Source: Asterias rubens
Lineage: Eukaryota
DNA length: 64,000 nucleotides
Reading direction: 5' to 3'
Assembly: GCF_902459465.1 (NCBI RefSeq)
Contig: NC_047068.1
Coordinates: forward strand, 4,774,001-4,838,000
The notes beneath the pieces were generated by a model. It saw nothing but the letters and a program-made list of their open reading frames with translations. It was not told where the DNA came from and searched no databases. The position numbers and the translations under genes were made by a program. Each line of letters begins with the position of its first letter. Position 1 is the first letter of the stretch. Positions 1,266 to 61,295 of this stretch are shown piece after piece.

Positions 1266-1633
1266 AGGGTCTATGTACTTTTTTGGGACAAAAAACACAA
1301 TGTCCACAGATTTACATTAAACTTGCAGTTTGAAGATAATGATAGTGGAAAGCTACCCTGAAAATATTTCTTGCTGAGGTGCTGTAGTTTTTGAGAAATG
1401 AGTAAAACAATGTCTTGAAAATAATTTTCGTCTCACTGATCATGAGACGAAAATTATTTTAGCATGTAAAAACGTATTTTCATGACATTGTATTACTCAT
1501 TTCTCAAAAACTACAGCACCTCAGAATCTAAAATTTTCAGGGAAGCTTTCTACTATCATTATCTTCAAACATTGTAAGTTTAATGTAAATCTGTGGACAT
1601 AATGTTTTGTGTTACAAAAACTACCCAAATCCT
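1266..1633. mobile_element. Non-autonomous TTAA-flanked DNA transposon (Kolobok-like MITE)
   Basis: TTAA at 1262-1265 and 1634-1637. Termini AGG...CCT, internally near-palindromic, no ORF. Confidence 0.6.
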
Positions 1634-2108
1634 TTAACATAAAGACAACATGAACAATTTACATGTTAAATTACTCTCTAAAGAAATGTTGTGTTTTGAT
1701 CTGCAAAAATAAACTAGAAAAACTTACATGTAGTTTGGTACAAATTTTTCATACAATAAAATGTTAGAAGACTTTGGTTACAACCATAGTTTTAAAAAAC
1801 CGAGGATGGCAGGGAAAATAGTCTAACCTCTATCTGATGAGAAAATGTAGCACTATATGAAGGTATATGACATACAGCTAAGCAACAAAAAAACAGATAG
1901 CCAAAAGTTGAATTTGTTGGAAACAAAGCAACCAATCATGGGCTGTATTTTCATTTTAAAAATTTTTGCAGAAATGTTAAATTTTTTCAAATTATCTGTT
2001 AAAACACGGTCGAAAGTTTGTTGATCACAGTTTGTTTATCAACTGTAGAAAGGTCGATAGATTAGAAATTCGAAGTAAATATATGAACACCGAAACAGTC
2101 ACCGTTAA

Positions 2109-12600: not shown

Positions 12601-15600
12601 ACATAGCAGTTAAAAAACTACTTGGTGTAAATAATCAATTGAAAGTGGACTATGTATGAAAGTGACTGTCTTAATTTATCAAACCATTAATAATTGTCTT
12701 AATCCAAACTTATTTGTCCTTGTTGATCTGCAGGTTGGGCTGATCTATGTGTTCAATCTCATCGTTGGCACTGGTGCCCTTACAATGCCATTGGCATTTG
12801 CGAGGGCAGGGTGGGCCATGGGTGGTGCTCTTATAACCATCCTTGCATTTGCCAGGTAAGCTAAAATGTTAATTAATTTCAACCCTGTGTAGTTGATGAT
12901 AATCTCAATAATCAAACCTGATAATGTTATCGTACACAAAGAGATTTAAAGATGTAAACTGTGTATTTGTGTAGCACTTTTGTTTTTAATTTGGAATGTT
13001 CTATTATTTTCAGTTTCCTAACAGCAACATTTGTAGTGGAGGCCATGGCGTCTGCTAATGCTGTAATAAGATTCAAACGTAAAGAGAAGAAAAGAGAGGT
13101 GAGACACTCTTAGTTTTTTTTATGTGCCTTGAAGTAGGTTGTCTCTTTCACCACATTTAATTACTGCAGTTCACTTTGTTATACTTGTAGACCTAACTGT
13201 TATCTAGGGCTATACTGTAGTTCACTTTGGGTATGTTCAGACAGCGTACTAAGTTAAACCCGAACCGGTTTAACTTCTACGAGCAGCAGGGGGTGGTCGT
13301 AAAAATAAAAACCCCTTGCGTTCAGACAGCACTGAGTTAAACCCGATACGGTTTATCTTTGGTTTTAAGAGGTCAAAGCAAACGCGGCCCCGTTACTCTA
13401 ACATCCTGTTTATTGGCCTGTTCATTGGTCACCGTGTGTTTACGTAATGATTACGGAGGTCAATGGGTTGTCTGTTGTGAGTTAAACCGGATGTGGTATT
13501 TTTTATTCTGTCCACACACAGTGTTAAAAGTTAAACCCGAAGCGGTCTAAAGATAAACCCCCTCCCTGGACGGTTTATCTTTTGTGGGTTGAACTCGATT
13601 CGGACTAACTTTAGAACCGTTCAGACACACTGAGTTGAACTCGATCGGTTTAAACCATGAGTTAAACCAACTTTAGTACTGTGTCTGAACGACCTCATTA
13701 TTATACTTGTAGGCCTAATTGTTATCTAGGGCTATACTGCAGTTCACTTTGTTATACTTGTAGGCCTAATTGTTATCTAGGGCTATACTGCAGTTCACTT
13801 TGTTATACTTGTAGGCCTAATTGTTATCTAGGGCTATACTGTAGTTCACTTTGTTATACTTGTAGGCCTAATTGTTATCTAGGGCTATACTGTAGTTCAC
13901 TTTGTTATACTTGTAGACCTAATTGTTATCTAGGGCTATACTGCAGTTCACTTTGTTATGCTTGTAGGCCTAATTGTTATCTAGGGCTATACTGTAGTTC
14001 ACTTTGTTATACTTGTAGGCCTAATTGTTATCTAGGGCTATACTGCAGTTCACTTTGTTATACTTGTAGGCCTAATTGTTTTCTAGGGCTATACTGTAGT
14101 TCACTTTGTTATACTTGTAGACCTAATTGTTATCTAGGGCTATACTGCAGTTCACTTTGTTATGCTTGTAGGCCTAATTGTTATCTAGGGCTATACTGTA
14201 GTTCACTTTGTTATACTTGTAGGCCTAATTGTTATCTAGGGCTATACTGCAGTTCACTTTGTTATACTTGTAGGCCTAATTGTTTTCTAGGGCTATACTG
14301 TAGTTCACTTTGTTATACTTGTAGGCCTAATTGTTATCTAGGGCTATACTGCAGTTCACTTTGTTATGTACTTGTAGGCCTGAAAAGCGGCAACAGTTGT
14401 GGTTTTGATAGAATATGCTCAACAGTGGTTAAATCTGTTCTTCCTTTCATTGCTGAACCTCTTAGCTACATCTTTAATCTGTCTTTTCTAACTGCTTCTG
14501 TTCCTCTCAACCTTAAAGTCGCTAAGATCATTCCTATTTTTTAAAACGGCAATAAGCAGGAATTCAGCAACTACAGGCCTATTTCTATCCTTCCTTGTCT
14601 TTCTAAAATCTTAGAGCGGCTTGTCCACAATCGCCTTTCTCAGTTCCTTTCCCACCATCGTATTCTTTTCGATCAGCAATATGGCTTTAGATCAAAACAC
14701 TCTACCGACATGGCCCTCATTGAACTTGTCGACAAAATTACCAATGCGTTCAGCAAAAAATTCTCTGCTATTGGTGTTTTCATTGATCTTTCTAAAGCTT
14801 TCGACACCCTTGATCACTCTATTCTTCTTTCCAAACTAAACCACTACGGTATCAGGGGTGTCCCGCTTCAATGGTTTGCTGATTACCTTTCTAACAGGTA
14901 CCAGTACACTACAGTAATGAGCTGTGACTCTAATCGTCAGAACATCCGGCATGGGGTGCCTCAAGGCTCTATCCTTGGGCCATTGCTTTTTTTGATTTAC
15001 ATCAATGATCTTCACAACTCTTCTTCGCTTCTGAACTTCACTCTTTTCTCCGACGATACAACCATCTTTTACTCTAGCCAGGACGTTACTTCCTTGATAG
15101 ACACTCTCAACTCTGAACTCTGCTCTATTTCTTTGTGGTTTAAAGCAAACAAACTTTCTTTAAATCACAATAAAACTAACTTTATTCTCTTTACCAAGTC
15201 AGCTCGTCCACTAGAGATTCTCTTGCCTCAACTGGTTATTGACAATATTCCCATCAACAGGGTATCTTCTGCAAAGTTTCTGGGCGTTACCATTGATCAA
15301 AGCCTTTCCTGGACAGACCACATTTCTTCTATTTCTAAAACCGTTTTCCGAAACACAGGCGTTCTATCTAAACTCCGCTTCTTTCTTCCAGCTACCTCTA
15401 TGCACTTACTGTACAACTCTCTTATTCTACCGTATTTGAATTATTGTAACATTGTCTGGGCGTATACCAGCAATAGTAAACTGAACGCCTTGTTTGTTAT
15501 CCAAAAAAGGGCCATTCGAATATGCACTTTTTCTCATTTCCGGGACCATTCTGCACCCCTTTTCGCGCGTCTATGCACCCTTACTCTTACTGACATCAAT

Positions 15601-18600
15601 AAACTTCAAACTGGCATTTTTATGTTCAAATATACTAATAATCTCCTTCCTCGAACATTTTCCACTTTCTTCACGTCGGTTCATGAAGTCCATGACTACT
15701 CAACCAGATCATGTAGGCCTAATAACCTGTTTCTTCCTTTCACCCGCACCCTGTACTCTAGCAACACCCTTTGATTCACTGGTCCACGTCTTTGGAATGC
15801 TAGGCCTATCTCTAGCAATTTAAGAACAATGCCGTCCGTGGGTCGATTCAAGATCTCTTACAAAAGAGTCCTCCTCTCCCACTATGTAACATAGCTTTTC
15901 TCTCCACTTATTTATTTTCTTTTGTCGTCTTCAGTTAGCCTGGTTTAACATTCTTTGTGTTTTTGTCATCAGCATTTTGTATTTTCATTGTGTAATTGTC
16001 TTGCCCTTGTTTCTTCTTCGATGTTTATTTGTTTGTTTGTTTGTTTGTTTGTTTGTTTTTGTTTGTGTGTTTTCTTGTCTGTATAAAGCCTCATGCTCTC
16101 ACTCCTGTCTTGTACATAGTTAATTCCTAGTTATTTATTTATTATCTGCTTTAAGATTATATTGTTTTTGTATAATTTAATACACTTTAGATTTGTTAAA
16201 TTTCTATGTACTGTTTAATTCTTACAATTGTTTTTTTTCTACAAGAGTATGGAATAAACGTTTATTGGAATTGAAATTGAAATAGGCCTAATTGTTATCT
16301 AGGGCTATACTGCAGTTCACTTTGTTATACTTGTAGGCCTAATTGTTTTCTAGGGCTATACTGCAGTTCACTTTGTTATGCTTGTAGACCTAATTGTTAT
16401 CTAGGGCTATACTGTAGTTCACTTTGTTATGCTTGTAGGCCTAATTGTTATCTAGGGCTATGAAGTGAGACACTTTAAGTTGTTTTTTTGTATCCTGAAG
16501 TAGGTTGTCTCTTTCACCACATTTAATTACTGCAGTTCACTTTGTTATACTTGTAGGCCTAATTGTTTTCTAGGGCTATACTGTAGGTCACTTTGTTATG
16601 CTTGTAGACCTAATTGTTATCTAGGGCTATACTGTAGTTCACTTTGTTATGCTTGTAGACCTAATTGTTATCTAGGGCTTTACTGTAGTTCACTTTGTTA
16701 TACTTGTAGGCCTAATTGTTTTCTAGGGCTATACTGTAGTTCACTTTGTTATACTTGTAGGCCTAATTGTTATCTAGGGCTATACTGCAGTTCACTTTGT
16801 TATTCTTGTAGGCCTAATTGTTTTCTAGGGCTATACTGCAGTTCACTTTGTTATGCTTGTAGACCTAATTGTTATCTAGGGTTATACTGTAGTTCACTTT
16901 GTTATGCTTGTAGACCTAATTGTTATCTAGGGCTATACTGTAGTTCACTTTGTTATGCTTGTAGACCTAATTGTTATCTAGGGCTATACTGTAGTTCACT
17001 TTGTTATACTTGTAGGCCTAATTGTTTTCTAGGGCTATACTGTAGTTCACTTTGTTATACTTGTAGGCCTAATTGTTATCTAGGGCTATACTGCAGTTCA
17101 CTTTGTTATACTTGTAGGCCTAATTGTTTTCTAGGGCTATACTGTAGTTCACTTTGTTATGCTTGTAGGCCTAATTGTTTTCTAGGGCTATGAAGTGAGA
17201 CGCTTTTAAGTTGTTTTTATGTATCCTGAAGTAGGTTGTCTCTTTCACCACATTTAATTACTGCAGTTCACTTTGTTATACTTGTAGGCCTAATTGTTAT
17301 CTAGGGCTATACTGCAGTTCACTTTGTTATACTTGTAGGCCTAATTGTTTTCTAGGGCTATACTGTAGTTCACTTGTTATACTTGTAGGCCTAATTGTTT
17401 TCTAGGGCTATACTGTAGTTCACTTTGATATGCTTGTAGGCCTAATTGTTATCTAGGGCTTTAAGTTGAATGTTTTCTGTAAGAGCAGCTCGATCCCTTG
17501 TGTTATGATGTACTAAAAGTACAGATATTTTCATCAATATAATCATTTTTGTTACATTTAAAATTTTACCAATTATATTTGATACTCTTTGCAACAATAG
17601 GAAGAAACTGTAATTTAGTTAACTTGCGGATACAACCATGTGTAAACCTCTTATGTGTGAGTGTTGGCTCTGAGAAGAGCCGGTTTGGTCTTGACATTTC
17701 GCACAGTATACACAGTACAGTATACTCTGCTCTTTGCAACAAATTGAGCTTGATGCAAGGTAGTAAAATCTTACATTTAAATACTTTTAAGTACTGCAAA
17801 TGTAAGATATTAATGCTTTATTATCTCAAGATTTACTGTTGGTATTTCTTATCCTTTATTAAGCTTGAAGATTCCTCAAGTGATTCAAATGAAGAAATGA
17901 ATCGTGACTACCCTCATGAAGTTGAGAGTGAAGAGAAACAAAGTTTGCTTCATCCTCCGCCGCTTCATCCTCGTGGTGAGTCTACTTTATTTCACAGGGG
18001 GAGGGGGGTTATAGTGCAAGGATCACCTTGGAAAAGTGGTATCTTTCCCTCCATTCCTTGGACCCAGTTTAGAATTCCACTGAAAACCAGAGGCTCATAA
18101 TCACAAAGTGGGTTTTATTTAGATCCTGCCTGATTGAATGGGTTTCTATGGAGTTGCAGAATTATTGGATTGATACAAGATTACAAGTATGGGACAGTGT
18201 TACATACAATTGCCAAGCACAAAGATTAATTTAACTCATAAACATCTTATATGAATTTTTGTTTTACCAGATAAAGATAAGACACATCCAGACTACTTTG
18301 ATATTACAGAAAGAGTTGAAATGGCAACGATGGCTTCACTGTTCTTTAACAAAGGTATTATAAAAAAGTATTCATAAATACCTCAGACAGTTTCGCTATT
18401 CCTATTGGTGGAGAGCGCGTCACATGGGGGTGTATAAACCTTTGATAATGACCAGTGTTTATAACCAGCTGCGCGCAAGATTATCACGCGGAACGCAATT
18501 CATAGCTAAAGTGAGTGCGTTATCTAAGCTTGCGCGCGTAATCTTAGCGCGCGCACATACACACAACCCACGCGCATCGAACAGATTCTTCACAAAGTAA

Positions 18601-21600: not shown

Positions 21601-24600
21601 TTTGTCTTGGTGTAGTGATGAGTGCATTATTGTGGCATTTATAGTTGTTTGTCTTGGTGTAGTGATGAATGCATTATTTTGATTTGTCACAATTGTCCCC
21701 TCATGACGGCACTATCATATCACTGGTCCACAAACCTCTTTCACAAACCGTGTAAGGTGGTTGGTGTAGTGAGAGCATGGAGAGTGGTTGATGGAAAGTT
21801 GCAACAAATCAAAACAAGAACTACTTAAATCAAGACTATTGGAATGGTAAATGCATTGTTTGTCACAAAGTTTTAACTATGAACTATGAACTATGATATT
21901 TAAAAATATCGTACAGCCAGGTACATTGTGAGTGTTTGATGGAAAATTGCAACAAATCAAAACAAGGTCTTGCATCAAGACTAGTGGAACGGTAAATGCA
22001 TTGTTTGTCACATAGTTATAGATCATACAGCCAGGAACATTATTCTAATTTATCCTCTATGCAAAAATGAACCTTTTTTTGAACCATTGCAGTACCCAAT
22101 GCGAAGGATTCAAACTGCCTCTAGTTATCAGGCATTTGCTCTAGCAATGGAAAGGTTGTGGGTTTGATTCCCACTCGAGTAATTTTAGCAATGGAAAGGT
22201 TGTGGGTTTGATTCCCACTCGAGTAATTTTAGCAATGGAAAGGTTGTGGGTTTGATTCCCACTTAAGTAATTTTAGCAATGGAAAGGTTGTGGGTTTGAT
22301 TCCCACTCGAGTTATTTTAGTAATGGAAAGGTTGTGGGTTTGATTCCCACTCGAGTAATTTTAGCAATGGAAAGGTTGTGGGTTTGATTCCCACTCTAGT
22401 AATTTTAGTAATGGAAAGGTTGTGGGTTTGATTCCCACTCAAGTAATTTTAGCAATGGAAAGGTTGTGGGTTTGATTCCCACTCGAGTAATTTTAGTAAT
22501 GGAAAGGTTGTGGGTTTGATTCCCACTCAAGTAATTTTAGCAATGGAAAGTTTGTGGGTTTGATTCCCACTCGAGTAATTTTAGCAATGGAAAGGTTGTG
22601 GGTTTGATTCCCACTCGAGTAATTTTAGCAATGGAAAGGTTGTAGGTTTGATTCCCAATTGAGTAATTTTAGCAATGGAAAGGTTGTGTGTTTGATTCCC
22701 ACTCGAGTAATTTTTTTTCACAGAACTCAGGAAAGTACTTAGTATGCAGTGTTTTATACACATTATTGTGAGGGTTAAAAACAAATAAATACTCTTCACC
22801 CAGATGCAAAAGTTAACACCTATTAAACTAACAATAATTGTGTTTTTGTGTCATACAGTTGGTGTGAATCTTTTCTACATATGCATGGCAATCTACTTGT
22901 ATGGAGACATGGCAATCTATGCAGTGACTGTACCAGCATCTCTTAGAAACATCACATGGTATGCCTCATATTGCTTCACTACAAATTAAATACTAATACA
23001 TCTTGGCAGTAACTTTGTGTCCTTATTTGATAATGAATCCCTTGTGTCTAATTTAATTGAGCTGCTGCTAGCAGTAAATAGTTTGTTACAAACTTTGGTC
23101 TTGATTGTAGTTTCTTTTTACCCTTGCAGTTCATACGTTAAGGAGAATGCATCATTACCTCTAAGTGATGAAGACCCATGCTGGAATGGAAACAGTCTGA
23201 GTAGAATCAATGCATACAGAATATATCTGGTAAGATAATGCAACCTTTAAAAACTATTTTAAAGCCGTGTTCCCATTTGACATTTTCTTCTGTGGCCGTG
23301 ACTGGCGATTGTTTTAATCTGCAGTGCATACCTATCAGCGTTGTATTCCCTGACGATTGCAAAGCATTGTTATTACAGTGTGGACGAGGTAGGTTTAGAG
23401 CGCGGAACTTTTCCCATTGGAGTTTTTTTGTGGCTCAGATAAGTTACTGTGGCTGCGCAGAAGTCTTTCGCGACCTCTTTTGGCCTGTCAGTTTTACATC
23501 ACAGTCGTTGGAAGTTGACAGGGAGGTTAGTTTACCATGCTTCTTCATTGGATTTAATTTTGTAATTTTCCAAAAAAGTTGTACTTTAATAAAACGAGTA
23601 CAATGGGAACACAGCTTAATACATGTGACACCCCTATGACATAAGGCCTACTATTACAAGCATAGATTGTTTGTTTGTATAGCAAGCTTTGCTATTAAAA
23701 CAAGCCCTTTGTCATTAAGTACACTTGGACTTTGTTCACTGGGATTGTTTCCTTTGGTTCCTAGAAAATATTATAAAATTATACATCGTTTCTGTTTTCA
23801 GTCACAAAGTGACAAATGTATCAACAATTTCAAAATATGGCAAATCTTGCACAACTAATTAAGACAGTTACAGGATTGAACACCTATGACAGTTCTGTAT
23901 GATTGAAGAAGTCAGCTTCATTTTGTTGATAATTTAAGAGAAAACAAATGTAGGCTGTCTCCAAAAACAGCAGTTTAAACACAATTTTATTCAAATACAG
24001 GGTTGTGGCTGTTGTGCAGCTTTGTCAGCAAGTGAAAATAGAGAACTTTGTGAAAATGGTGACGACAGTCACATGATCCTTTATTGATTATTATATTACA
24101 GTGATCGGCTTGTGACCATGCAATGTTACAAAACTGTGATGTAATAACTGTACACACATATGATGGGTTCGAATCCTAATCCTACTCTCATCATTTCTCT
24201 CCAAATTGTTGTTTAGAGTGTAAAATGTGTTTCCTTATGTCTTTTTGAAGATTCCGCTTTTAGTCAACCTCATTTTGTGAACAGTTTAAATAAATTATTT
24301 GCTTGCTTTAATGCTGTTTTCAATGCCACAAAGAACCTAGTGTGCAAATCATGACTTTTATATCATAGAAATTGGTATTTTGTGATGAAGAGAAGATGTT
24401 TATTGCTGTCAAATCTAGCAAAGCAGGAGGGTCCAGAGTGTCAGTGACATCTAAAAGTCTGTTCTAAAAAGCTTGCCTCAGTTTACCCTTAACTCAGCCC
24501 TGGCTGTCCTTTTATTTGTTACTAACCACTTCAACTGGTGTTTTCTTTGTTTTAGACTGTATTTTCTGTAGTACTTGGCAGTTATGTTTTCTTCAATGTC

Positions 24601-28581: not shown

Positions 28582-31500
28582 TCACTGCAGTACCCCTGAT
28601 TTTCTCTCTGGTGAAGGGCTCCATGTTCTGAGCCTATAACAGGCTGGGTATCGTGCACTATGACTCTTATGGTCTCTTATCTTTCTTGCACTGCCTCGTT
28701 CTGATCCAGCCTCGTGCTCCTTCCAAAAATCTTGCACTTTGAGTTTGATGTCTGCGTTCTCGTCACGCCATTCCCTCTGCCATTGACGTAGCTCCTGGAT
28801 GTGTTCTTCTTTTCGCACCTTTATCAGATTTATTGAAATAAGATTTTAATTGTTAAATATTTCATATATTGAACAAAGAATTAAACAAACATAAATAAGG
28901 CACAATGCTTGATTAATTCTTAAGTCAACTAGAAACATTTACTATGAACTTGAATAGAAACTAAGCCCCATATAGGGTAACTGTAACATGTCGACAAGGG
29001 TTTTTAACTAACGGAGCCCCCATATAGGGTAACCGTGTAACATGTCGACAAGGGTTTTTAACTAACAGAGCCCCCATATAGGGTAACTGTGTAACATGTC
29101 GACAAGGGTTTTTAACTAACAGAGCCCCCATATAGGGTAACTGTGTAACATGTCGACAAGGGTTTTTAACTAACAGAGCCCCCTTTTAGGGTAACTGTGT
29201 AACATGTCGACAAGGGTTTTTAACTAACAGAGCCCCCATATAGGGTAACTGTGTAACATGTCGACAAGGGTTTTTAACTAATCAGAGCCCCCATATAGGG
29301 TAACTGTGTAACATGTACAAGGGTTTTTAACTAACAGCCCCCATATAGGGTAACTGTGTAACATGTTGACAAGGGTTTTTAACTAACAGAGCCCCCATAT
29401 AGGGTAACTGTGTAACATGTCGACAAGGGTTTTTAACTAACAGAGCCCCCATATAGGGTAACTGTGTAACATGTCGACAAGGGTTTTTAACTAACGGAGC
29501 CCCCATATAGGGTAACTGTGTAACATGTCGACAAGGGTTTTTAACTAACAGAGCCCCCATTTAGGGTAACCGTGTAACATGTCGACAAGGGTTTTTAACT
29601 AACAGAGCCCCCATATAGGGTAACTGTGTAACATGTCGACAAGGGTTTTTAACTAACAGAGCCCCCATATAGGGTAACTGTGTAACATGTCGACAAGGGT
29701 TTTTAACTAACAGAGCCCCCTTTTAGGGTAACTGTGTAACATGTCGACAAGGGTTTTTAACTAACAGAGCCCCCATATAGGGTAACTGTGTAACATGTCG
29801 ACAAGGGTTTTTAACTAATCAGAGCCCCCATATAGGGTAACTGTGTAACATGTACAAGGGTTTTTATTAACAGCCCCCATATAGGATAACTGTGTAACAT
29901 GTTGACAAGGGTTTTTAACTAACAGAGCCCCCATATAGGGTAACTGTGTAACATGTCGACAAGGGTTTTTAACTAACAGAGCCCATATAGGGTAACTGTG
30001 TAACAAGGGTTTTTAACTAACAGAGCCCCCATATAGGGTAACTGTGTAACATGTCAACAAGGGTTTTTAACTAACAGAGCCCCCATTTAGGGTAACTGTG
30101 TAACATGTCGACAAGGGTTTTTAACTAACAGAGCCCCCATATAGGGTAACTGTGTAACATGTCGACAAGGGTTTTTAACTAACGGAGCCCCCATATAGGG
30201 TAACTGTGTAACATGTCGACAAGGGTTTTTAACTAACAGAGCCCCCATTTAGGGTAACTGTGTAACATGTCGACAAGGGTTTTTAACTAACAGAGCCCCC
30301 ATATAGGGTAACTGTGTAACATGTCAACAAGGGTTTTTAACTAACAGAGCCCCCATATAGGGTAACTGTGTAACATGTTGACAAGAATTTTTAACTAACA
30401 GAGCCCCCATATAGGGTAACTGTGTAACATGTCGACAAGGGTTTTTGGTATTCGGCAACTGGCATCGGTAATGTTTTGACCTTTTTCAGGAGACAGACGC
30501 TTCTAACCCTAACTATGCTAAAATTCTAAACTAACTGGCAAGGTGACCATAGATGAAGACATAAATAGCTAAAAAGCGGTATTTAAAAGATAGGTTTTTA
30601 TATTACATTTAAAAGAGATGAGTTTCTGTTCGCTACGTATGTGAAGCGGTAGCGCATTCCAGAGCTTAGGGGCTGCCACAGAAAAAGCCCTATCACCAAA
30701 TGTAGTCAACATTTTACCAGAAGGATAATCCAAGAAAATACCATTATTCCCTGACCTAAGTTTATAAAAAGATACTTTCCGGATGGAAACAAGATCCTGA
30801 ACATACTTTGGAGAAAGACCATGAATAGCTTTAAATGTCAACAACAGGATTTTAAAATGAATCCTGTGCGAAACAGGCAGCTAATGTAATTGACGAAGTA
30901 CAGGTGTGATGTGATCAAATCGATGTGTGTTCGAAACAATTCTGGCAGCTGCGTTTTGAACCCTTTGTAGTTTAGCTATCTGTGACTTTGGCAGACCATA
31001 CAAAAGGCTATTACAATAATCAAGACGACTGGTCACAAATGCATGAATGAGTTTTAAAAGAGAGTCTTGTGTAAGGATCTGACTAATGCGTTTGATGTTG
31101 TGAAGATGAAAAAAGGCAGCAGAGCAAGATTTATTGATGTGGGTGTTCATTGTAAGTTCAGAATCGAACCAAGACCCCCAGTTACGAACACATGTTGTAG
31201 GAAAAACAGTAGCTTCACCTATCATTATATTGGAAATATTAATTTTCTTCAATTGCTGCTTTGATCCGATGATCAAAAATTCACTTTTAGCATCATTAAT
31301 TAAAAGGTGGTCATGTATCATCCATTGCCTGATGTCCCTAATGCAATCTTCGATTAAAGTCACAGCAGCTTGACAAGATTTGTCGTCGTCGGGTCTAAAA
31401 GATAGATACAGCTGAGTGTCATCGGCATAGCAATGGACATCAGGAAAATGATGCTCAAGGATGTCAAACAATTTAGAGGCATAGACAATAAATAAAAATG

Positions 31501-52285: not shown

Positions 52286-55200
52286 ATGTCGGAGTTATCA
52301 ACCGAAACTGAAATGACCTTTGAGCGACCCAGCAGCAGATATGAAAATCTGTCCAGCCGTTTCCTTCAGAAAGGTCGCAATTTTAGGCGACAGTATGCCC
52401 ATCTTTATGCAGAGCGTTTGTGCAGTATGTATACTCGGTTGACAGAGACAGCCAACAGAAAATGGGGTAATGATAACAAATTGTTGTAATCAAAATTTAT
52501 TTATTTACTCACAAAAATTGTGTCTAGAAATAGATGTCACTGTCTGCAAAAAAGTTGCTAATATTATATAATGTTTTTTTAAAACAAGAACTCTTTCTAT
52601 GGGCAACCATTCAAATAACTCTTTTAACCAGATAACAAAAAAGAACAAATTAATGTGCACATTTTTCCCTGACTTCATGTGCCTGATTGAAATGAGATTC
52701 CAGTCAGTGAGTCTTGGTTCTAGCCATAAGGCCCTAAAAACAGCCATGTCAGCCAAAGTCATAGTCCCAAATGACAGCTGAGGTTGTAGGCCCAAATGAC
52801 AGCCATGTCAGCCGAGGTCATAGGCCTTAATGACAGCCATGTCAGCTGAGGCTATAGGCCCCTTATGAAATGCATGTCTGGCGAGGTTATAGGCCCTTAT
52901 GAGAGCCATGTTAGCTGAGGCTATAGGCCCCTTATGAGATGCATGTCAGCCGAGGTCATAGGCTCTAATGACAGACATTTCCGCCGAGGTCATAGGCCCA
53001 AATGGCAGCCATGTCAGCCGAGGTCATAGGCCCAAATGACAGCCGAGGTCATAGGCCCTAATGACAGCCATGTCAGCTGAGGTCACAGGCCCTTAGCCAT
53101 GTCAGCCGAGGTCATAGGCCCAAATGACAGCCATGTCAGCCGAGGTCATAGGCCCTAATGACAGCCATGTCAGCTGAGGTCACAGGCCCTTAGCCATGTC
53201 AGCTGAGGTCATAGGCCCTAATGACACCCATATCAGCCGAGGTCATAGGCCCTAATGACAGCCATGTCAACCGAGGTCATAGGCCCAAATGACAGCCATG
53301 TCAGCCGAGGTCATAGGCCCAAATGGCAGCCATGTCAGCTGAGGTCATAGGCCCTAATGACAGCCATGTCAGCCGAGGTCATAGGCCCAAATGACAGACA
53401 TTTCAGCCGAGGTCATAGGTCCAAATGGCAGCCGTATCAGCTGAGGTCATAGGCCAAAATTGCAGCCATGTTAGCCAAGGTTTAGCAATCAACTGTGCGT
53501 GAAAACAGTTCTCTCTATAGAGGAACAATAAATCCTGGTGCTTTAGAGAGAATCTTTGTTCTCTTGGCTTTGTCAAGTAAAGGATTCTTTACGCCAGTAC
53601 TTTTTCTTTCTAGAAAATTTTATAAATCCTTTTTTGTTTGTCCTTTTTAGGAGAGTCAGTTTTGATGCGCAAATTGTTTGAACTGAAGGCAGATGAGGAG
53701 TGTTGCGTGATTGGAACCTTATTTAAAAGTATGGAACTCAAACCCAGCATTCTGAAAGAAATCAGCGAAGATGTAAGATGATTTCATCAACCTTGCCTTC
53801 AATCCCCTCCCCTCCCCTAATAAAAAGGTCTGCTGTGTGTCCACATTGTACAAGCAGCAAACACCTGAAAATGACTTAAGGGTTGTGGACCAAGTCCAAG
53901 AACCAAAGGCGCATAATTATTAAGTAAGAACAAAAGTAACATCTCTCCCTTTCCCATATTCCACTTCCATGGTACAGTAGAAATCTGTTGTGTTGTATCT
54001 TACTTAGCAAGGGGGATAGCTAAAGGATTGGGTCTTTTCTCCTAAGAAAGAGTTTCTTCATCTTTGCAACGTTATTCTCTCTATAAGTTATTTCCATTTT
54101 TAAATCTTCTCTTGTTTTTAGCACAACATGGTTCCGCAGCCGAAAAGGGACAAGTACATAGCAGATACAGACACATTGATTCTAGAAGATGAACTCCAAA
54201 GAATTGTTCTCCTTGGAAATATTGATGTCCAAAAGGCTGTTACAGGTAGGCTACAAAGTATTACAGCCACTTAGAATTTAAAAACATTTTTGTTACAAAC
54301 TTTTGGGAAATTGTTTTGAAATTCTAGTGTTATAGTTATGTGAGAGATGACGTGGTTTTCATCATTCCATCTTGCTCCCTTTATAGGTGTAGTTATAGTT
54401 TTATATGGTCACGAGAAAGATGACATGGTTTTCATCATTCCATCTTACTCCCTTTATAGGTGTAGTTATAGTTTTATACGGTCACGAGAAAGATGACATG
54501 GTTTTCATCATTCCATCTTGCTCCCTTTATAGGTGTAGTTATAGTTTTATACGGTCACGAGAAAGATGACGTGGTTTTCATCATTCCATCTTGCTCCCTT
54601 TATAGGTGTAGTTATAGTTTTATATGGTCACGAGAAAGATGACATGGTTTTCATCATTCCATCTTGCTCCCTTTATAGGTGTAGTTATAGTTTTATATGG
54701 TCACGAGAAAGATGACATGGTTTTCATCATTCCATCTTGCTCCCTTTATAGGTGTAGTTATAGTTTTATATGGTCACGAGAGAGATGACGTGGTTTTCAT
54801 CATTCCATCTTGCTCCCTTTATAGGTGTAGTTATAGTTTTATATGGTCACGAGAAAGATGACGTGGTTTTCATCATTCCATCTTGCTCCCTTTATAGGTG
54901 TAGTTATAGTTTTATATGGTCACGAGAAAGATGACGTGGTTTTCATCATTCCATCTTGCTCCCTTTATAGGTGTAGTTATAGTTTTATACGGTCACGAGA
55001 AAGATGACATGGTTTTCATCATTCCATCTTGCTCCCTTTATAGGTGTAGTTATAGTTTTATATGGTCACGAGAAAGATGACGTGGTTTTCATCATTCCAT
55101 CTTGCTCCCTTTATAGGTGTAGTTATAGTTTTATATGGTCACGAGAAAGATGACGTGGTTTTCATCATTCCATCTTGCTCCCTTTATAGGTGTAGTTATA

Positions 55201-58200
55201 GTTTTATATGGTCACGAGAAAGATGACGTGGTTTTCATCATTCCATCTTGCTCCCTTTATAGGTGTAGTTATAGTTTTATATGGTCACGAGAAAGATGAC
55301 GTGGTTTTCATCATTCCATCTTGCTCCCTTTATAGGTGTAGTTATAGTTTTATATGGTCACGAGAAAGATGACGTGGTTTTCATCATTCCATCTTGCTCC
55401 CTTTATAGGTGTAGTTATAGTTTTATACGGTCACGAGAAAGATGACATGGTTTTCATCATTCCATCTTGCTCCCTTTATAGGTGTAGTTATAGTTTTATA
55501 TGGTCACGAGAAAGATGACGTGGTTTTCATCATTCCATCTTGCTCCCTTTATAGGTGTAGTTATAGTTTTATATGGTCACGAGAAAGATGACGTGGTTTT
55601 CATCATTCCATCTTGCTCCCTTTATAGGTGTAGTTATAGTTTTATATGGTCACGAGAAAGATGACGTGGTTTTCATCATTCCATCTTGCTCCCTTTATAG
55701 GTGTAGTTATAGTTTTATATGGTCACGAGAAAGATGACGTGGTTTTCATCATTCCATCTTGCTCCCTTTATAGGTGTAGTTATAGTTTTATACGGTCACG
55801 AGAAAGATGACGTGGTTTTCATCATTCCATCTTGCTCCCTTTATAGGTGTAGTTATAGTTTTATACGGTCACGAGAAAGATGACATGGTTTTCATCATTC
55901 CATCTTACTCCCTTTATAGGTGTAGTTATAGTTTTATATGGTCACGAGAAAGATGACGTGGTTTTCATCATTCCATCTTGCTCCCTTTATAGGTGTAGTT
56001 ATAGTTTTATATGGTCACGAGAAAGATGACGTGGTTTTCATCATTCCATCTTGCTCCCTTTATAGGTGTAGTTATAGTTTTATACGGTCACGAGAAAGAT
56101 GACATGGTTTTCATCATTCCATCTTGCTCCCTTTATAGGTGTAGTTATAGTTTTATATGGTCACGAGAAAGATGACATGGTTTTCATCATTCCATCTTGC
56201 TCCCTTTATAGGTGTAGTTATAGTTTTATATGGTCACGAGAAAGATGACATGGTTTTCATCGTTCCATCTTGCTCCCTTTATAGGTGTGGTTATAGTTTT
56301 ATACGGTCACGAGAAAGATGACATGGTTTTCATCATTCCATCTTGCTCCCTTTATAGGTGTAGTTATAGTTTTATATGGTCACGAGAAAGATGACGTGGT
56401 TTTCATCATTCCATCTTGCTCCCTTTATAGGTGTAGTTATAGTTTTATATGGTCACGAGAAAGATGACGTGGTTTTCATCATTCCATCTTGCTCCCTTTA
56501 TAGGTGTAGTTATAGTTTTATATGGTCACGAGAAAGATGACATGGTTTTCATCATTCCATCTTGCTCCCTTTATAGGTGTAGTTATAGTTTTATATGGTC
56601 ACGAGAAAGATGACATGGTTTTCATCATTCCATCTTGCTCCCTTTATAGGTGTAGTTATAGTTTTATACGGTCACGAGAAAGATGACATGGTTTTCATCA
56701 TTCCATCTTGCTCCCTTTATAGGTGTAGTTATAGTTTTATATGGTCACGAGAAAGATGACATGGTTTTCATCATTCCATCTTTCTCCCTTTATAGGTGTA
56801 GTTATAGTTTTATACGGTCACGAGAAAGATGACATGGTTTTCATCATTCCATCTTGCTCCCTTTATAGGTGTAGTTATAGTTTTATATGGTCACGAGAAA
56901 GATGACGTGGTTTTCATCATTCCATCTTGCTCCCTTTATAGGTGTAGTTATAGTTTTATATGGTCACGAGAAAGATGACATGGTTTTCATCATTCCATCT
57001 TGCTCCCTTTATAGGTGTAGTTATAATAATAATAATAATAATAATTTATTCATTTATATTGCGCCCATTCTGTAAAATGTAAACAAGCGCATAACAAAAT
57101 AATTATAAAAATATAACATTTTACAACAGGAAAATATACAGCAATCCAAACAAACTGAAAATACAAGAACCTTACAGGACAATCCGAAGAGTAAAAATTG
57201 CAAAACATAAGACAGACCAAAACAAACTATAGTTATAGTTGTATAAGGTCATGAGATATGAAGTGGTTTTCATCATTCCATCTTACTCCCTTTATAGGTG
57301 TGGTTATAGTTGTATACGGTCACGAGAGAGATGATGGGAAGTTTCAAGTGGAAGACTTTTGTACAGCAGACCTCCCAGTGCAGATTCCTCGTACAAATCT
57401 GGACCAAGATAGGTAATGTTACTCTCGTCAAATGCTTTAACTTCATCGTCTATAAATGATTGTGATGGTAAAAAAACAAAACGAAGACATTTTGAAGGAA
57501 ACCTGTTCAAAGGGAACATCAACTGTTAACTGATTTAACTATACTACATTTAGGGAATAATTTTGGCCTATTTAAACTCTCTGTTTAATACCATTTGCAG
57601 TCTGGATGTGACACAGACTGCAACCGGTTTTAAACGGAGTGTACTGTGTTTAATACCGGCCAAGCACATTTTTATTTCCATTCATAAATACCTTTTCTGT
57701 CAAAAAACATCAAAACTTTTGGGTCCAAAAGTTAAAAAAATGCAATAATTGTTCACTGATTTCTTTCAACAAAACACCCCTCAAGCTATGAAATGGTAAG
57801 GCCCTCTGGTAAAAACTCTTTATAAGAAGATTGGCGTGCACGTCACGCGTATCGCGTGATGTGGCACAGATGTTCCAGCCGTTGCTCTCGACCAATAGGA
57901 ATGAAAAACTGTCTTATAAGCACAGGTGCAAGCTCGCGAGTCACGCCCATGTTTTAACACTTCTGGCTTTGGTTATATCATCCGTTTAAACACCCCCACG
58001 TGATGTCCTCTCAACCAATCAAAATCGAGAAACTGTCTGGGTTATTTATGAATGCATATTAAATGTCCATCTCTATTATGTTAACACTGTTCTATGGTTC
58101 TATGTGTTTAGGCATTGTTTTGCACTAATGACTGATAATTTCTCTGGACATCATTTAGGTACATTGTCTTGGTGTCTGGTCTGGGTGTTGGGGAGAAGGG

Positions 58201-61200
58201 TCATCACCTTATGACCCTTCAGCTTCTACTTGATTTAATAACCGGTCAGCTAGGGGGTCCTGAGGAGCAGGAGATGTATTCAAAGGTTGTACGAGTCATT
58301 GTTGCCGGTAATAGTCTCAGTAAGGACACACAGACTGCTGATGCACTCAATACGGTTAGTAGAATACACATTTAACCCCCTCCAATCACTAGCTCCAAGT
58401 TAGTTGACTTGACTTTGTGCAAATTAAATATAATTGAAGTCGCTTTAACTTGATATGATGTGGTCATGTAAATTGTTACTAACCAAATACAGTTGACTCC
58501 CTTTATAACAAGATTGTGGGAACTGTCCAAATTACCCTATAATGGGGCATTGTTATAAGAGAATAGTTAAACAAAAAAACACATAGCAGAAATGATGTTT
58601 TGGACTTTAGAATGTACTCTTTATTATAAAGCAGAACCTTTTTAGAACAGTGCTCTTTCTAACCACTGTAACCTGTTTTCAAGAACTCTTCGGTACGGTA
58701 AACTTACAGGTAGAAAAGCATTATATTGGAGATTTCCTCCCAGTTAGATTGACAAATGTCAAATAAACAACAGATAAAGAAAGGAGAATGTTATAAAATG
58801 CTTTAACAACAACTTTTTGTTAACCTTTTCTTTCCTTAGGCCAAATACTTGAGTCGTAAGGTGAAAGCAGGCACAGTAGAAGCTGTCAAGGCATTGGATG
58901 ATATATTTGCTCAACTTGCTGTAAGACATCAGTTTCTTTCATTTAAAGACAGGGTACACTATTGGTAATTATCAAAGACCAGTCTTCTCACTTTGTGTAT
59001 CCCAAAATAAGCATAAAATAACACATGTGAAAATTTGGGCTCAATTATTCGTCAAAGTAAAAAAAAAAAAAAAAGACAAAACACCTTTGTTGCGTAGAAA
59101 CTTGTGCTTTTAGATATGACTGAGATTCAAATTGTTTTAGTGAAAATTACCCCGTTCTATAATACTACACTACTTCAAAGGGAGTTGTTTCTCACAATGT
59201 GCTATATTATCACTGACTCTCTAGTGTTTCTTACCAAGTAAGTTGTATATGGTTATTAACTTGAAGAGTGACTACCAAAAGTATACCCTGCCTTTAAGAT
59301 TCAACTTGTTGAATATTCTCTATGCATAATGGCTCAGCACATACTGTACATGTATGGTTTGTTAATCTTTGCAAACTACTAAGGAAGTTTATTTATTTAT
59401 TTATTTCCTTTATTTACCCAGGGTGAGCCAAATATTCTCTATGCATAATGGCTCAGCACTAATGTACATGTATGGTTTGTTAATCTTTGCAAACTACTAA
59501 GGAAGTTTATTTATTTATTTATTTCCTTTATTTACCCAGGGTGAGCCAAATCAGTAAACAAACTGGTTTCCATTTGGGCCCTGCGAACAAACTAACATGT
59601 TAAAAGTAAAAAGTTCATGTTGGTGTGATGCAATTTTTTTTGGGTTTAGATCCTATTTATTATAATAATGAGTAGGGTAGATGGCCTTAGCTTTCGATCC
59701 ATATCGGAACCTTCTTCAGATTATTTATTATAAGAACTTATAATAATCATGTGTTAATGAATAAACAGTAACAATAACGAGCAGTGAAAGTTCAAGACCT
59801 TTCTGATGCGACCTCCTGAAATCGCATCTTCCTAAATTAAAAGCTACAATACTTCTGATAGAATGGTTTTCTTTTTCATTTTTCTTTTGACAGAGTTGTG
59901 TTGCTGTTGATGTGATGCCTGGTCCAAATGATCCCTCATTCTGCTTCTTGCCTCAGCAGCCCCTGCATCGATGTATGTTCCCCCAAGCCTCTGTTTATCC
60001 CACAATGCGCTCTGTCACAAACCCATATGAAGCGTGTGTTGATGGTGTTAGGTAGGATAAAACAGTTGCAATGTTACATCCTCAAAATGTACTATACATA
60101 TCTGTTCATATGGAAAGCAGTTTGTTAACTTAAAATTTTAAATTATGTAAAATCCCTGTTGTTAGCAATTGAACTTGTTTTTGTAGTGATTTGTTAATTT
60201 GGACTGCTAATGTATCACTCGCTTTCAGATTTCTAGGGACATCTGGGCAGAACATAACGGACATATTCCAGTATACTGATATGGAGGATGGCATGGAGAT
60301 ATTGGAGGCGACTCTTAAAGCCTGTCATGTAGCACCCACGGCTCCAGATACATTAGGTTTGAAAGCTCTTTAGATTATAAAGCTATTCATTCACAAAGTG
60401 TGGGAAAACAATGTTAAATTGGATGTGCAAGTCTTGAATGTATCAAACACATCTCAAACAAGTCAAATCTTTTAAAAACTTTTTCTTTTGGACAACAAAT
60501 CTTGAAAATAACAAAATACCAATAACAATTTGATGTACAAGTTTGTAATGCAACTAAATTGTTAAAATTTTTAATAAAACAAAAATTGATTTTAGGATGA
60601 GGATGCTTATTTGTTTAGAAACCAATTTGCCAATCACACCTGTTTCATGGTAATTTTGTGATGGCTTCTATACACTTTGGATTTAATCCCTAACATTCAC
60701 TTCTGTCTACTACAGCTTGCTATCCTTACTATGATGAAGATCCATTCATTGTGTCCGAGTGTCCACACGTCTACTTTGCTGGCAACCAGAACAAATTCCA
60801 AAGCAAAATCTGGAAAGGTATTAATTTAATTGGTTTTCTTAAGAACTGTTTTTAGCAATTTTATTTTAAATATCGGGCCAGTAAACTATTTATTTCGAAA
60901 AACTATTTGTTTTAATAGGTGTTATTGGGCGGTTTGGAGTAGGGTATGGGAGGCAAGAACACGCAATGGAGGCAAATTCCTTTGTACCTTCTGAAGAATT
61001 ACACTCTGGCTTGAATAATGTTAGTTATTGTCCACTGTCTTGGAATTGAATAGTTTTCAAAAATGTAATAAGTAGTTTTGAAGTTCTAGTAGTAAATGAT
61101 GTTTTTTGTTGCACCTTTTATTACCATGTTTCTGTGTCTGTCTTTGTAATCACAGGTCAATCTGGGCAGAAGGTTCTACTGATAACAGTTCCACAGTTTA

Positions 61201-61295
61201 TGAGCAGCCATGCCTGTGTGTTATTGAATCTACGCACACTCAGCTGTACACCTCTTGTGTTTTCCAGTGACATCAATCCAAGCAATGCTGAATGA
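52286..61295 (+). CDS. POLD2: DNA polymerase delta subunit 2, 10 coding exons, 448 aa
   Basis: join(52286-52466,53651-53772,54122-54245,57298-57412,58159-58354,58840-58920,59894-60051,60229-60356,60716-60817,61156-61295), 1347 nt, GT-AG. Motifs [27 protein letters not shown]...[22 protein letters not shown] and CPHVYFAGN. Confidence 0.97.
52740..53480. repeat. ~34-bp minisatellite in POLD2 coding intron 1
   Basis: Unit CAGCCATGTCAGCCGAGGTCATAGGCCCAAATGA, roughly 21-22 diverged copies. Confidence 0.9.
54352..57025 (+). repeat. 73-bp minisatellite: 36 full copies plus 1 partial copy of the POLD2 exon-4 acceptor and exon start
   Basis: Unit GTGGTTTTCATCATTCCATCTTGCTCCCTTTATAG|GTGTAGTTATAGTTTTATAYGGTCACGAGAAAGATGAC aligns with 57263-57335. 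The period checks out: 54352+35x73=56907. Confidence 0.97.
57026..57229 (-). mobile_element. 3' tail of an L2-like LINE or L2-dependent SINE inserted in the last repeat unit
   Basis: Minus strand ends GGGCGCAATATAAATGAATAA(ATT)n. TSD TAGTTATA at 57018-57025 and 57230-57237. Confidence 0.75.
57680..58053. mobile_element. MITE with ATTCATAAATA termini
   Basis: Same family as 6388-6612. Confidence 0.65.
58947..59293. mobile_element. Kolobok-like TTAA MITE
   Basis: TTAA|AGACAGGGTACAC ... GTATACCCTGCCT|TTAA. Confidence 0.65.
59312..59548. repeat. ~119-bp local tandem duplication that includes a reversed retroposon (TAAA)n tail
   Basis: AATATTCTCTATGCATAATGG...ACCCAGGGTGAGCCA at 59312 and 59431. 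Confidence 0.85.
59666..59721 (-). mobile_element. 56-bp Penelope-like insertion carrying a truncated hammerhead motif
   Basis: Minus strand CUGAAGA-A-GGUUC-CGAUAU-GGAUC-GAAA-GCUA-AGGCC. Flanking duplication TATTTATTATAA at 59654-59665 and 59722-59733. Confidence 0.65.

What the first reader, a model, noticed from the sequence alone, without database searches (positions are those of the whole stretch)
54352..57412. Thirty-seven decoy copies of an essential gene's splice acceptor and exon start
Each 73-bp unit is 35 nt of intron end (pyrimidine tract plus TTTATAG) joined to about 38 nt of POLD2 exon 4, reading [13 protein letters not shown] against the true [14 protein letters not shown]. The spliceosome must skip 37 near-identical AG sites to reach the real one at 57297. 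Because 73 is not a multiple of 3, using a decoy hits TGA in the next unit and should trigger NMD. Exon-type variants are scattered among units (GTGG near 56286, GAGAGAG near 54777, TTACTCCC near 54446 and 55905, TACGG in many), suggesting exchange with the real exon or retained ancestral states. This is a natural test of exon definition and possibly a copy-number-tuned control of POLD2 output (inference).
Basis: partly seen in the sequence, partly recalled or inferred. Interest (0 to 1): 0.82.

Follow-up and report, generated by a model that had tools for sequence, protein, structure and literature searches.

The report
Splice-acceptor minisatellite in starfish POLD2
Intron 3 of the common starfish's DNA polymerase delta subunit 2 gene holds 37 head-to-tail copies of the gene's own intron-3/exon-4 splice junction; the sister species has the same repeat, and it is a large new example of a known repeat type ("mirage" minisatellite), with no evidence so far that it regulates anything.

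Summary
Window 54345-57025 is a 73-bp tandem array (36.7 copies, 98% identical). Each unit is 35 nt of intron end plus 38 nt of exon 4 of POLD2. There are 37 acceptor copies upstream of the true one (AG ends at 57297). Every decoy runs into a stop within 22-44 codons.

The window encodes Asterias rubens XP_033630653.1 exactly, and that protein uses the true junction.

Asterias amurensis carries the orthologous array: 19 decoys with the same left edge, running straight into exon 4. Patiria and Acanthaster have none. Units differ 1.8% (rubens) and 6.0% (amurensis) within species but 9.8% between species, with array-wide fixed changes. This is concerted evolution.

This fits the "mirage" minisatellites of amphioxus, which do not disturb splicing. 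The scan has already found the same kind of repeat in other genes of this genome (MRPS18A, HIBADH and others).

Copy-number-tuned control of POLD2 is neither supported nor excluded, because no transcript data could be reached.

One useful fact: only one of the 73 repeated positions separates true from decoy in both species. The signal that picks the true acceptor therefore most likely lies further downstream.

Verdict: new member of a known kind, moderate interest.

The parts
54122..54245 (+). POLD2 exon 3 (124 nt, ends in phase 1; donor CAG|GTAGGC)
   Evidence: The exact exon model reproduces XP_033630653.1. Pfam DNA_pol_D_N matches at E=1.8e-8.
54246..57297 (+). Intron 3, 3052 nt. It is the longest intron of the gene (the others are 177-1184 nt), and about 2.9 kb of it is the array plus spacer.
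   Evidence: In Patiria and Acanthaster the same intron is about 570-650 nt with no array.
54328..54351 (+). Decayed partial exon-part copy forming the left edge of the array. It is identical in A. rubens, A. amurensis and an independent ENA contig.
   Evidence: Alignment A1.
54352..57022 (+). 73-bp minisatellite: 36 full units plus unit 37 truncated after 11 exon nt. Each unit has 35 nt of intron end (branch-point-like TTCAT at -26, pyrimidine tract, TTTATAG) and 38 nt of exon-4 start. There are 37 decoy acceptors, with AG ends at 54386 + 73n up to 57014.
57023..57228 (.). 206-bp spacer: an (ATA)n tract plus A-rich sequence, flanked on both sides by TAGTTATA (a possible 8-bp target-site duplication). 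It is absent from A. amurensis and has no other copy in the window.
   Evidence: The ENA contig L005 is identical from 57083 rightwards but differs further left.
57229..57262 (+). Old, diverged exon-part copy (89% to the unit over 27 nt, keeps the ancestral G50). It is the remnant of the last decoy unit and now lies next to the true intron end.
57263..57297 (+). True intron-3 end (35 nt) with the productive acceptor TTTATAG|. It differs from the decoy consensus only at unit position 23 (A for G).
57298..57412 (+). POLD2 exon 4 (115 nt; donor TAG|GTAATG). Only its first 38 nt are copied into the array. The purine-rich GGGAAG and GGAAGAC motifs lie just past the copied part.
   Evidence: direct reading.

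Best explanation
This is a 'mirage'-type minisatellite. A 73-bp segment spanning the intron-3/exon-4 junction of POLD2 was duplicated in tandem in an ancestor of Asterias rubens and A. amurensis, after the split from the Patiria and Acanthaster lineages. The copies lie upstream of the real junction, so they sit inside intron 3 and are removed with it. The array has since grown and been homogenised separately in each species, as expected from unequal exchange or slippage (concerted evolution). It now has 37 decoy acceptors in A. rubens and 19 in A. amurensis. In A. rubens a 206-bp spacer was later inserted into the last unit and cut the array off from the true junction.

Shown here: the anatomy, the orthology, the species-specific homogenisation, the ancestral nature of the exon-like variants, the premature stops, and the fact that the annotated mRNA product uses the true acceptor.

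Inferred: the decoys are mostly ignored. Each carries only 38 nt of exon and no competent donor. The true acceptor is followed by a full 115-nt exon with purine-rich motifs and a real donor, which allows exon definition. Rare decoy use would give stop-containing transcripts that nonsense-mediated decay clears. The array is most likely neutral or slightly deleterious, one of many minisatellites in a very repeat-rich genome.
For: Array and unit anatomy. Gene identity and exact exon model.

Orthologous array in A. amurensis: 73-bp period, 20.2 copies, 94% matches, same left edge, contiguous with exon 4. There is no array in Patiria or Acanthaster.

Concerted evolution: unit diversity is 1.8% in rubens and 6.0% in amurensis, against 9.8% between species. 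T50 is in 36/36 rubens decoys, while G50 is in 19/19 amurensis decoys and in both true exons. A66 is in 35/36 rubens decoys against G in all amurensis decoys. Flanking introns are only about 3% diverged.

Minority states match the true exon (p=5e-6) and the amurensis consensus (p=2e-4).

All 37 decoys meet a stop within 22-44 codons. All donor-like sites inside the unit are weak on a crude U1-pairing proxy.

RefSeq proteins of both species carry the true junction, and the only extra isoform differs at the N-terminus.

The window has many other minisatellites. Independent ENA contigs confirm both edges at 100% identity.

Against: No RNA-level data for Asterias could be reached, so 'decoys are ignored' rests on RefSeq models, which would not list NMD targets, and on analogy.

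Each decoy is a complete acceptor module, with the same branch-point-like TTCAT at -26, the same pyrimidine tract and the same AG as the true site. The first decoy would make a well-formed 141-nt intron. In A. amurensis the last decoy lies only 73 nt upstream of the true AG, well within exon-definition range. Some decoy use is therefore quite plausible.

The site TAG|GTGTAG at each unit start pairs with U1 about as well as some real donors of this gene on the crude proxy. A 73-nt pseudo-exon is therefore not excluded.

Copy number and the very high unit identity in A. rubens could be affected by assembly or polishing, and this cannot be checked here.
Confidence: 0.78

Rival explanations
1. Unproductive-splicing attenuator. 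The decoys are used at an appreciable rate, each use gives a stop-containing transcript removed by NMD, and the number of units sets how much productive POLD2 mRNA is made.
For: Each unit is a full acceptor module that differs from the true one at a single intron position, and that position is not consistent between species. The first decoy gives a 141-nt intron, and all decoys stop within 22-44 codons. A human precedent exists for a junction-derived VNTR whose length correlates with expression and splicing: the ABCA7 intron-18 VNTR (PMC5954066).
Against: Copy number differs twofold between sister species (37 against 19) in an essential replication gene. There is no excess conservation of the decoy splice signals: the longest invariant run is 12 columns, p=0.14. 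The array turns over quickly, as a neutral minisatellite does. No alternative isoform is annotated at this junction. Amphioxus mirages give no aberrant mRNAs. In ABCA7 the use of the repeated donor itself did not depend on VNTR length.
Confidence: 0.1
2. Assembly artefact, or a copy number and uniformity badly inflated by assembly and polishing.
For: The units are 98% identical and 15 of 36 are exactly the same. Neither independent short-read contig crosses the array: L004 stops 4 nt past the first decoy AG, and L005 diverges inside the spacer. No array-derived ORF is present in the protein collection.
Against: An independent assembly of the sister species has the orthologous 73-bp array with the same left edge. 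Both edges are reproduced at 100% identity in ENA metagenome contigs. Variants are scattered irregularly, and neighbouring variant sites are linked (Fisher p=0.025), as in real arrays. Polishing cannot create the fixed species-specific states. The 2.7-kb array is short compared with typical long-read lengths (general knowledge).
Confidence: 0.04
3. Recursive-splicing ratchet. Exon 4 starts with GT, so every copy is an AG|GT site. Exon 3 could be joined to a decoy, and the regenerated donor (CAG|GTGTAG) could be used again. The intron would then be removed stepwise with no trace in the mRNA.
For: The regenerated site CAG|GTGTAG has six contiguous U1-pairing positions and a crude duplex energy of -8.4 kcal/mol, within the range of this gene's real donors.
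Against: The same sequence is regenerated at the true exon-3/exon-4 junction (CAG|GTGTGG, -7.6). It must not act as a donor there, or exon 4 would be lost. GTGTAG lacks the +4A and +5G of the recursive-site consensus AG|GTAAGT. The intron is 3 kb, whereas known recursive sites sit in very long introns (general knowledge of Drosophila and vertebrate recursive splicing).
Confidence: 0.03
4. The array is a functional RNA or DNA element unrelated to splicing, such as a structured intronic RNA, a coding mini-ORF or a protein-binding array.
For: Each pair of units carries a 49-54 aa ORF.
Against: The RNA fold is no better than shuffled sequence (z = -0.19 for three units, +0.14 for the true junction). 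There is no Rfam family or tRNA. The ORF has no homologue among 5.8 billion proteins. The sequence is fully explained as copies of the junction.
Confidence: 0.02

Closest known systems
[quoted passage not shown] Sources: Canestro et al. 2002 as cited in PMC3087553, and PMC3902484.
   Same: The tandem units copy the 3' end of an intron plus the 5' part of the next exon and lie inside the intron next to the authentic junction. Unit size is in the reported range (10-160 bp). The repeated AG signals are potential cryptic sites, yet the normal mRNA is made. Length is unstable. Evolution is concerted, with edge units left out of homogenisation.
   Different: The host is an echinoderm, not a cephalochordate. 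The array is far larger (37 copies against 2-6 in the globins) and more uniform. It is shown here to be shared by two species. It is split from the true junction by a later 206-bp insertion. Normal splicing is inferred from annotation, not tested by RT-PCR.
Human ABCA7 intron-18 VNTR (25-bp unit that includes the exon-18 splice donor; PMC5954066)
   Same: The tandem repeat is seeded at the gene's own splice junction. Use of a repeated site gives a frameshift and a premature stop, which would be NMD substrates. It shows that such arrays can affect expression and splicing.
   Different: It copies a donor, not an acceptor, and has almost no exon content. Its functional effect (exon-19 skipping, lower expression) has been measured in people. 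No such data exist for the starfish array.
Intron gain or splice-site duplication by tandem genomic duplication (model discussed in PMC3087553, PMC4974935 and PMC3443670)
   Same: A tandem duplication containing AG|GT creates extra splice signals that the spliceosome can remove silently.
   Different: Here no new intron is created. The duplicates only lengthen an existing intron.
Poison exons and unproductive splicing coupled to NMD
   Same: Any use of a decoy would produce a transcript with a premature stop.
   Different: Regulated poison exons are typically strongly conserved and their use is demonstrated. Here the signals show no excess conservation and no use has been seen.

Membership tests
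Mirage minisatellite (tandem duplication of an intron/exon boundary) | Head-to-tail tandem array of minisatellite-size units | tested here: met
   Period 73, 36.7 copies, 98% matches. The spacing is exactly 73 nt 36 times.
Mirage minisatellite (tandem duplication of an intron/exon boundary) | The unit is a copy of the host gene's own intron/exon junction, including the splice signal | tested here: met
   The unit is 67/73 identical to the true intron-3/exon-4 junction: 35 nt of intron plus 38 nt of exon. The junction is fixed by an exact exon model.
Mirage minisatellite (tandem duplication of an intron/exon boundary) | The array lies in the intron adjoining the authentic junction | tested here: met
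   It is contiguous with exon 4 in A. amurensis. In A. rubens it is separated by a lineage-specific 206-bp spacer plus one old unit.
Mirage minisatellite (tandem duplication of an intron/exon boundary) | Regular splicing of the mRNA is not disturbed | tested here: inconclusive
   RefSeq proteins of A. rubens and A. amurensis carry the true junction, and no isoform differs there. No transcript reads could be reached: the DNA scans were blank and no Asterias transcript assemblies were found.
Mirage minisatellite (tandem duplication of an intron/exon boundary) | Length instability, and concerted evolution with edge units excluded | tested here: met
   There are 37 decoys against 19 in the sister species. 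Diversity is 1.8% and 6.0% within species against 9.8% between, with array-wide fixed states. The diverged edge units are 54328-54351 and 57229-57262. Polymorphism within the species is not testable here.
Regulated unproductive splicing (AS-NMD, poison exon) | The alternative site yields a premature stop | tested here: met
   All 37 decoys stop within 22-44 codons.
Regulated unproductive splicing (AS-NMD, poison exon) | The alternative site is actually used, and its use is regulated | not testable with these tools
   No RNA-seq or cDNA data are accessible.
Regulated unproductive splicing (AS-NMD, poison exon) | The element is conserved beyond neutral expectation | tested here: not met
   The invariant run around the acceptor is not significant (p=0.14). 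The array turns over rapidly and its copy number differs twofold between sister species. It is absent from Patiria and Acanthaster.
Zero-length recursive splice site | Pyrimidine tract and AG directly followed by a strong donor (GTAAGT-like), in a very long intron | tested here: not met
   The site is AG|GTGTAG, which lacks +4A and +5G. The intron is 3 kb.

The most novel reading that the evidence does not exclude
The decoy array acts as a copy-number-dependent drain on POLD2 pre-mRNA. A fraction of transcripts is spliced to one of the 37 complete acceptor modules (or includes a 73-nt pseudo-exon bounded by AG...TAG|GT) and is destroyed by NMD. In that case a fast-mutating minisatellite would set the dose of an essential replication factor and would differ between individuals and between sister species. 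A related novel reading is that sea-star genomes generate junction-centred minisatellites more often than chance. Earlier notes of this scan list several such genes, but one follow-up judged their number compatible with chance.
Probability: 0.08. Interest if true: 0.7.

Novelty: new member of a known kind. Interest (0 to 1): 0.36.

Why it matters
This is an unusually clean natural experiment on splice-site choice. There are 37 (A. rubens) and 19 (A. amurensis) near-perfect copies of a complete acceptor module upstream of the one acceptor that gives a functional product, in a gene the cell cannot do without.

Comparing the two species shows that only one of the 73 repeated positions (exon +38, T in the true copy, C in the decoys) consistently separates true from decoy. 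The information that selects the real acceptor must therefore lie in the rest of exon 4 and its donor. Minigenes could test this directly.

The finding also extends 'mirage' minisatellites from amphioxus to echinoderms. It gives a dated example of concerted evolution inside an intron: the array is shared by two species, and new variants have swept through all units since they split.

If decoy use turned out to be substantial, the array would be a tunable, highly mutable regulator of a replication gene. Nothing here shows that.

Tried and rejected
1. RNA structure hiding the decoys: three units and the true junction fold no better than shuffles (z = -0.19 and +0.14). Rejected.

2. A branch-point difference at unit position 23 (CTTAC in the true A. 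rubens site, CTTGC in most decoys) as the discriminator. Rejected, because the true A. amurensis site has T there and 6 of 19 amurensis decoys have A.

3. Gene conversion from the real exon as the source of the exon-like variants. Not needed, because the same states are the consensus of the amurensis array.

4. Selection keeping or destroying the decoy splice signals: the invariant run is not significant (p=0.14).

5. Its absence from A. amurensis and the 8-bp flanking repeat favour an insertion. However, the ENA contig L005 continues differently on the left, so this is unresolved.

6. Transcript evidence: no Asterias transcript-derived proteins turned up in the homologue search. The decoy ORF has no homologue. 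Two DNA scans of JGI metagenome contigs, for the spliced junction and for the unit, were blank.

7. Known RNA families or tRNAs in the gene region: none.

8. The primary mirage paper (Canestro 2002, PMC117041) is not held. It is cited only through PMC3087553 and PMC3902484.

9. Literature on minisatellites in Asterias: nothing relevant.

10. Proper splice-site scoring (MaxEntScan and similar) is not available offline. Only a crude U1-pairing proxy was used.
Full report
**The observation**

Tandem Repeats Finder reports one array at 54345-57025: period 73, 36.7 copies, 98% matches, no indels. A pattern search for the acceptor core finds 38 sites. Thirty-seven are spaced exactly 73 nt apart (AG ends 54386 to 57014), and one lies 283 nt further on (AG ends 57297). 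Phased as 35 nt before the AG plus 38 nt after it, the 36 full units have seven minority states at six variable positions. The last site, the true junction, differs from the unit consensus at 6 of 73 positions.

In the exon-3 frame a decoy reads [13 protein letters not shown], where the true exon reads [14 protein letters not shown]. All 37 decoys reach a stop after 22-44 codons, and 35 of them after 36 codons, at a TGA in the next unit.

One correction applies. Unit 37 is cut after 11 exon nt by a 206-bp spacer (57023-57228). An old, diverged exon-part copy (57229-57262) sits between that spacer and the true intron end.

**The gene**

Exon-sized pieces hit Pfam DNA_pol_D_N and DNA_pol_E_B in the right order. 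Exon 4 aligns with human POLD2 residues 156-194 in PDB 6s1m_B (E=1.3e-7).

A representative search and a homologue search led to the cluster that holds XP_033630653.1, 'DNA polymerase delta subunit 2-like [Asterias rubens]'. A 10-exon GT-AG model at 52286-61295 translates to that protein exactly. The window is therefore Asterias rubens, as earlier notes of the scan stated, and this was tested here.

Exon 3 is 54122-54245 and exon 4 is 57298-57412. Intron 3 is 3052 nt, the longest in the gene, and about 2.9 kb of it is array plus spacer. The RefSeq protein reads ...[20 protein letters not shown], which is the true junction.

**Relatives**

The A. amurensis POLD2 locus was fetched (L001). It has a 73-bp array in the same intron: 20.2 copies, 94% matches. 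It holds 19 decoy acceptors plus the true one, and the left edge is the same. There the array runs straight into exon 4 with no spacer.

Patiria miniata and Acanthaster planci keep the same intron position. Their intron is about 570-650 nt and has no repeat. The array therefore arose in the Asterias lineage before the two Asterias species split. The spacer is specific to A. rubens.

**How the array evolves**

Mean pairwise unit difference is 1.8% within A. rubens and 6.0% within A. amurensis, but 9.8% between the two arrays. Flanking introns differ by only about 3%.

Some states are fixed across a whole array:
- T at position 50 in 36/36 rubens decoys, against G in 19/19 amurensis decoys and in both true exons.
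- A at position 66 in 35/36 rubens decoys, against G in all amurensis decoys.

New variants have therefore swept through the array since the species split. This is the classical signature of concerted evolution by unequal exchange.

The edge pieces (54328-54351 and 57229-57262) are diverged and keep older states. The same was described for amphioxus globin mirages (PMC3087553).

Four of the seven minority states in rubens decoys equal the true-junction state (permutation p=5e-6). Three equal the amurensis consensus (p=2e-4). They are not chance, and retained ancestral states are a sufficient explanation.

The two common polymorphisms are CG/TG at position 55 and CG/CA across the unit boundary, both CpG transitions (direct reading). 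They are linked between neighbouring units (Fisher p=0.025). Without these two sites, unit diversity in rubens is 0.46%, about one sixth of the between-species intron divergence. The present units therefore share a recent ancestor. This is a rough inference.

**Splicing**

Each unit is a self-contained acceptor module. It has a yUnAy match (TTCAT) at -26, a pyrimidine tract and TTTATAG.

The only intron position where the true rubens site differs is position 23 (CTTAC against CTTGC). The true amurensis site has T there, and six amurensis decoys have A, so this is not the discriminator. In both species only position 73 (exon +38, T in the true copy, C in the decoys) separates the true copy from the decoys.

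Whatever selects the true acceptor therefore most likely lies beyond the repeated 73 nt, in the remaining 77 nt of exon 4. That stretch starts with the purine-rich GGGAAG...GGAAGAC and ends in the donor TAG|GTAATG. This is the exon-definition picture, supported by classical work showing that exon sequence next to duplicated splice sites influences the choice (general knowledge). It is an inference here, not a result.

Donor-like sites inside the unit are weak on a crude U1-pairing proxy. The best is TAG|GTGTAG at the acceptor itself, which scores like the weaker real donors of this gene. A 73-nt pseudo-exon is therefore not excluded. RNA secondary structure does not hide the decoys (z = -0.19 and +0.14).

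There are reasons for caution. The first decoy would make a neat 141-nt intron. In A. amurensis the last decoy is only 73 nt upstream of the true AG.

**Function**

Nothing found here points to a regulatory role:
- Copy number differs twofold between sister species.
- The splice signals of the decoys show no excess conservation (longest invariant run 12 columns, p=0.14).
- The only extra annotated isoform, in A. amurensis, differs at the N-terminus and not at exon 4.
- The window holds many other minisatellites of 34-73 bp.

No RNA data could be reached. Leakage into NMD, or a dose effect, therefore remains open.

The human ABCA7 VNTR is seeded on a splice donor, and its length correlates with expression and exon skipping. 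It shows that such effects exist (PMC5954066). In that case, however, use of the repeated donor itself did not depend on length.

**Is it real DNA?**

The independent A. amurensis assembly has the orthologous array. An ENA marine metagenome scaffold (L004) matches exon 3, the intron start, the array's left edge and the first decoy acceptor at 100%. It ends 4 nt past the AG, as a short-read contig would at a repeat.

Another ENA contig (L005) is identical to 57083-57648. It has nine mismatches, all within 57033-57082. Further left it carries 1.9 kb of unrelated non-coding sequence. This is either an assembly chimera through a repeated element or a second haplotype with a longer insertion. Neither contig spans the array, so the exact copy number rests on the reference assembly.

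**Comparison and verdict**

[quoted passage not shown] The last point is only indirectly supported here.

Earlier notes of this scan report the same kind of repeat in other genes of this genome (MRPS18A, HIBADH and a five-gene region). I took the name and the literature lead from them and checked the papers myself.

The finding is a large, well-preserved new member of a known kind, in a new phylum, with a useful two-species comparison. Interest is moderate.

Noticed in passing
window 52771-53481 (POLD2 intron 1); L001 5668-6329: A 34-bp minisatellite (21.4 copies, 81% matches) sits in intron 1. It is also present at the orthologous place in A. amurensis (19.3 copies, same consensus). It is older and more decayed than the 73-bp array and does not obviously derive from an exon edge.
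   Followed up: partly
L005 1-1918 against window 57023-57082: The ENA contig k141_1290426 is identical to the window from 57083 to 57648 but carries 1.9 kb of unrelated sequence where the window has the array. It is either an assembly chimera (the identical stretch inside the spacer is 146 nt, just above k=141) or a second A. rubens haplotype with a long insertion in intron 3.
   Followed up: partly
window 1262-1637; L005 273-637: A palindromic, MITE-like element (131-nt arms, 88% complementary in L005) occurs in the window and in L005 at 81-84% identity. This points to a dispersed repeat family in this genome.
   Followed up: no
whole window (e.g. 13701-14381, 16528-17191, 22142-22714, 28966-30446): The window is very rich in minisatellites: 51-bp, 44-bp and 54-bp arrays of 13-28 copies at 94-96% identity. 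This sets the background rate against which a junction-spanning array should be judged.
   Followed up: no
L004 and L005 (ENA samples ERZ23498661, ERZ1764464, ERZ23498373): Marine metagenome assemblies contain A. rubens nuclear DNA at 100% identity. Such contigs can serve as independent checks of reference-assembly edges.
   Followed up: partly
L001 2001-5188: In A. amurensis the annotated POLD2 gene starts about 3.2 kb upstream of the first coding exon. A second isoform (X2, 398 aa) uses a different first coding exon, so alternative 5' ends exist in this gene.
   Followed up: no
window 54352-57022, unit positions 55-56 and 73|1: The two frequent polymorphisms of the array are both CpG-to-TpG or CpG-to-CpA changes. 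This is consistent with germline methylation of this gene body.
   Followed up: partly
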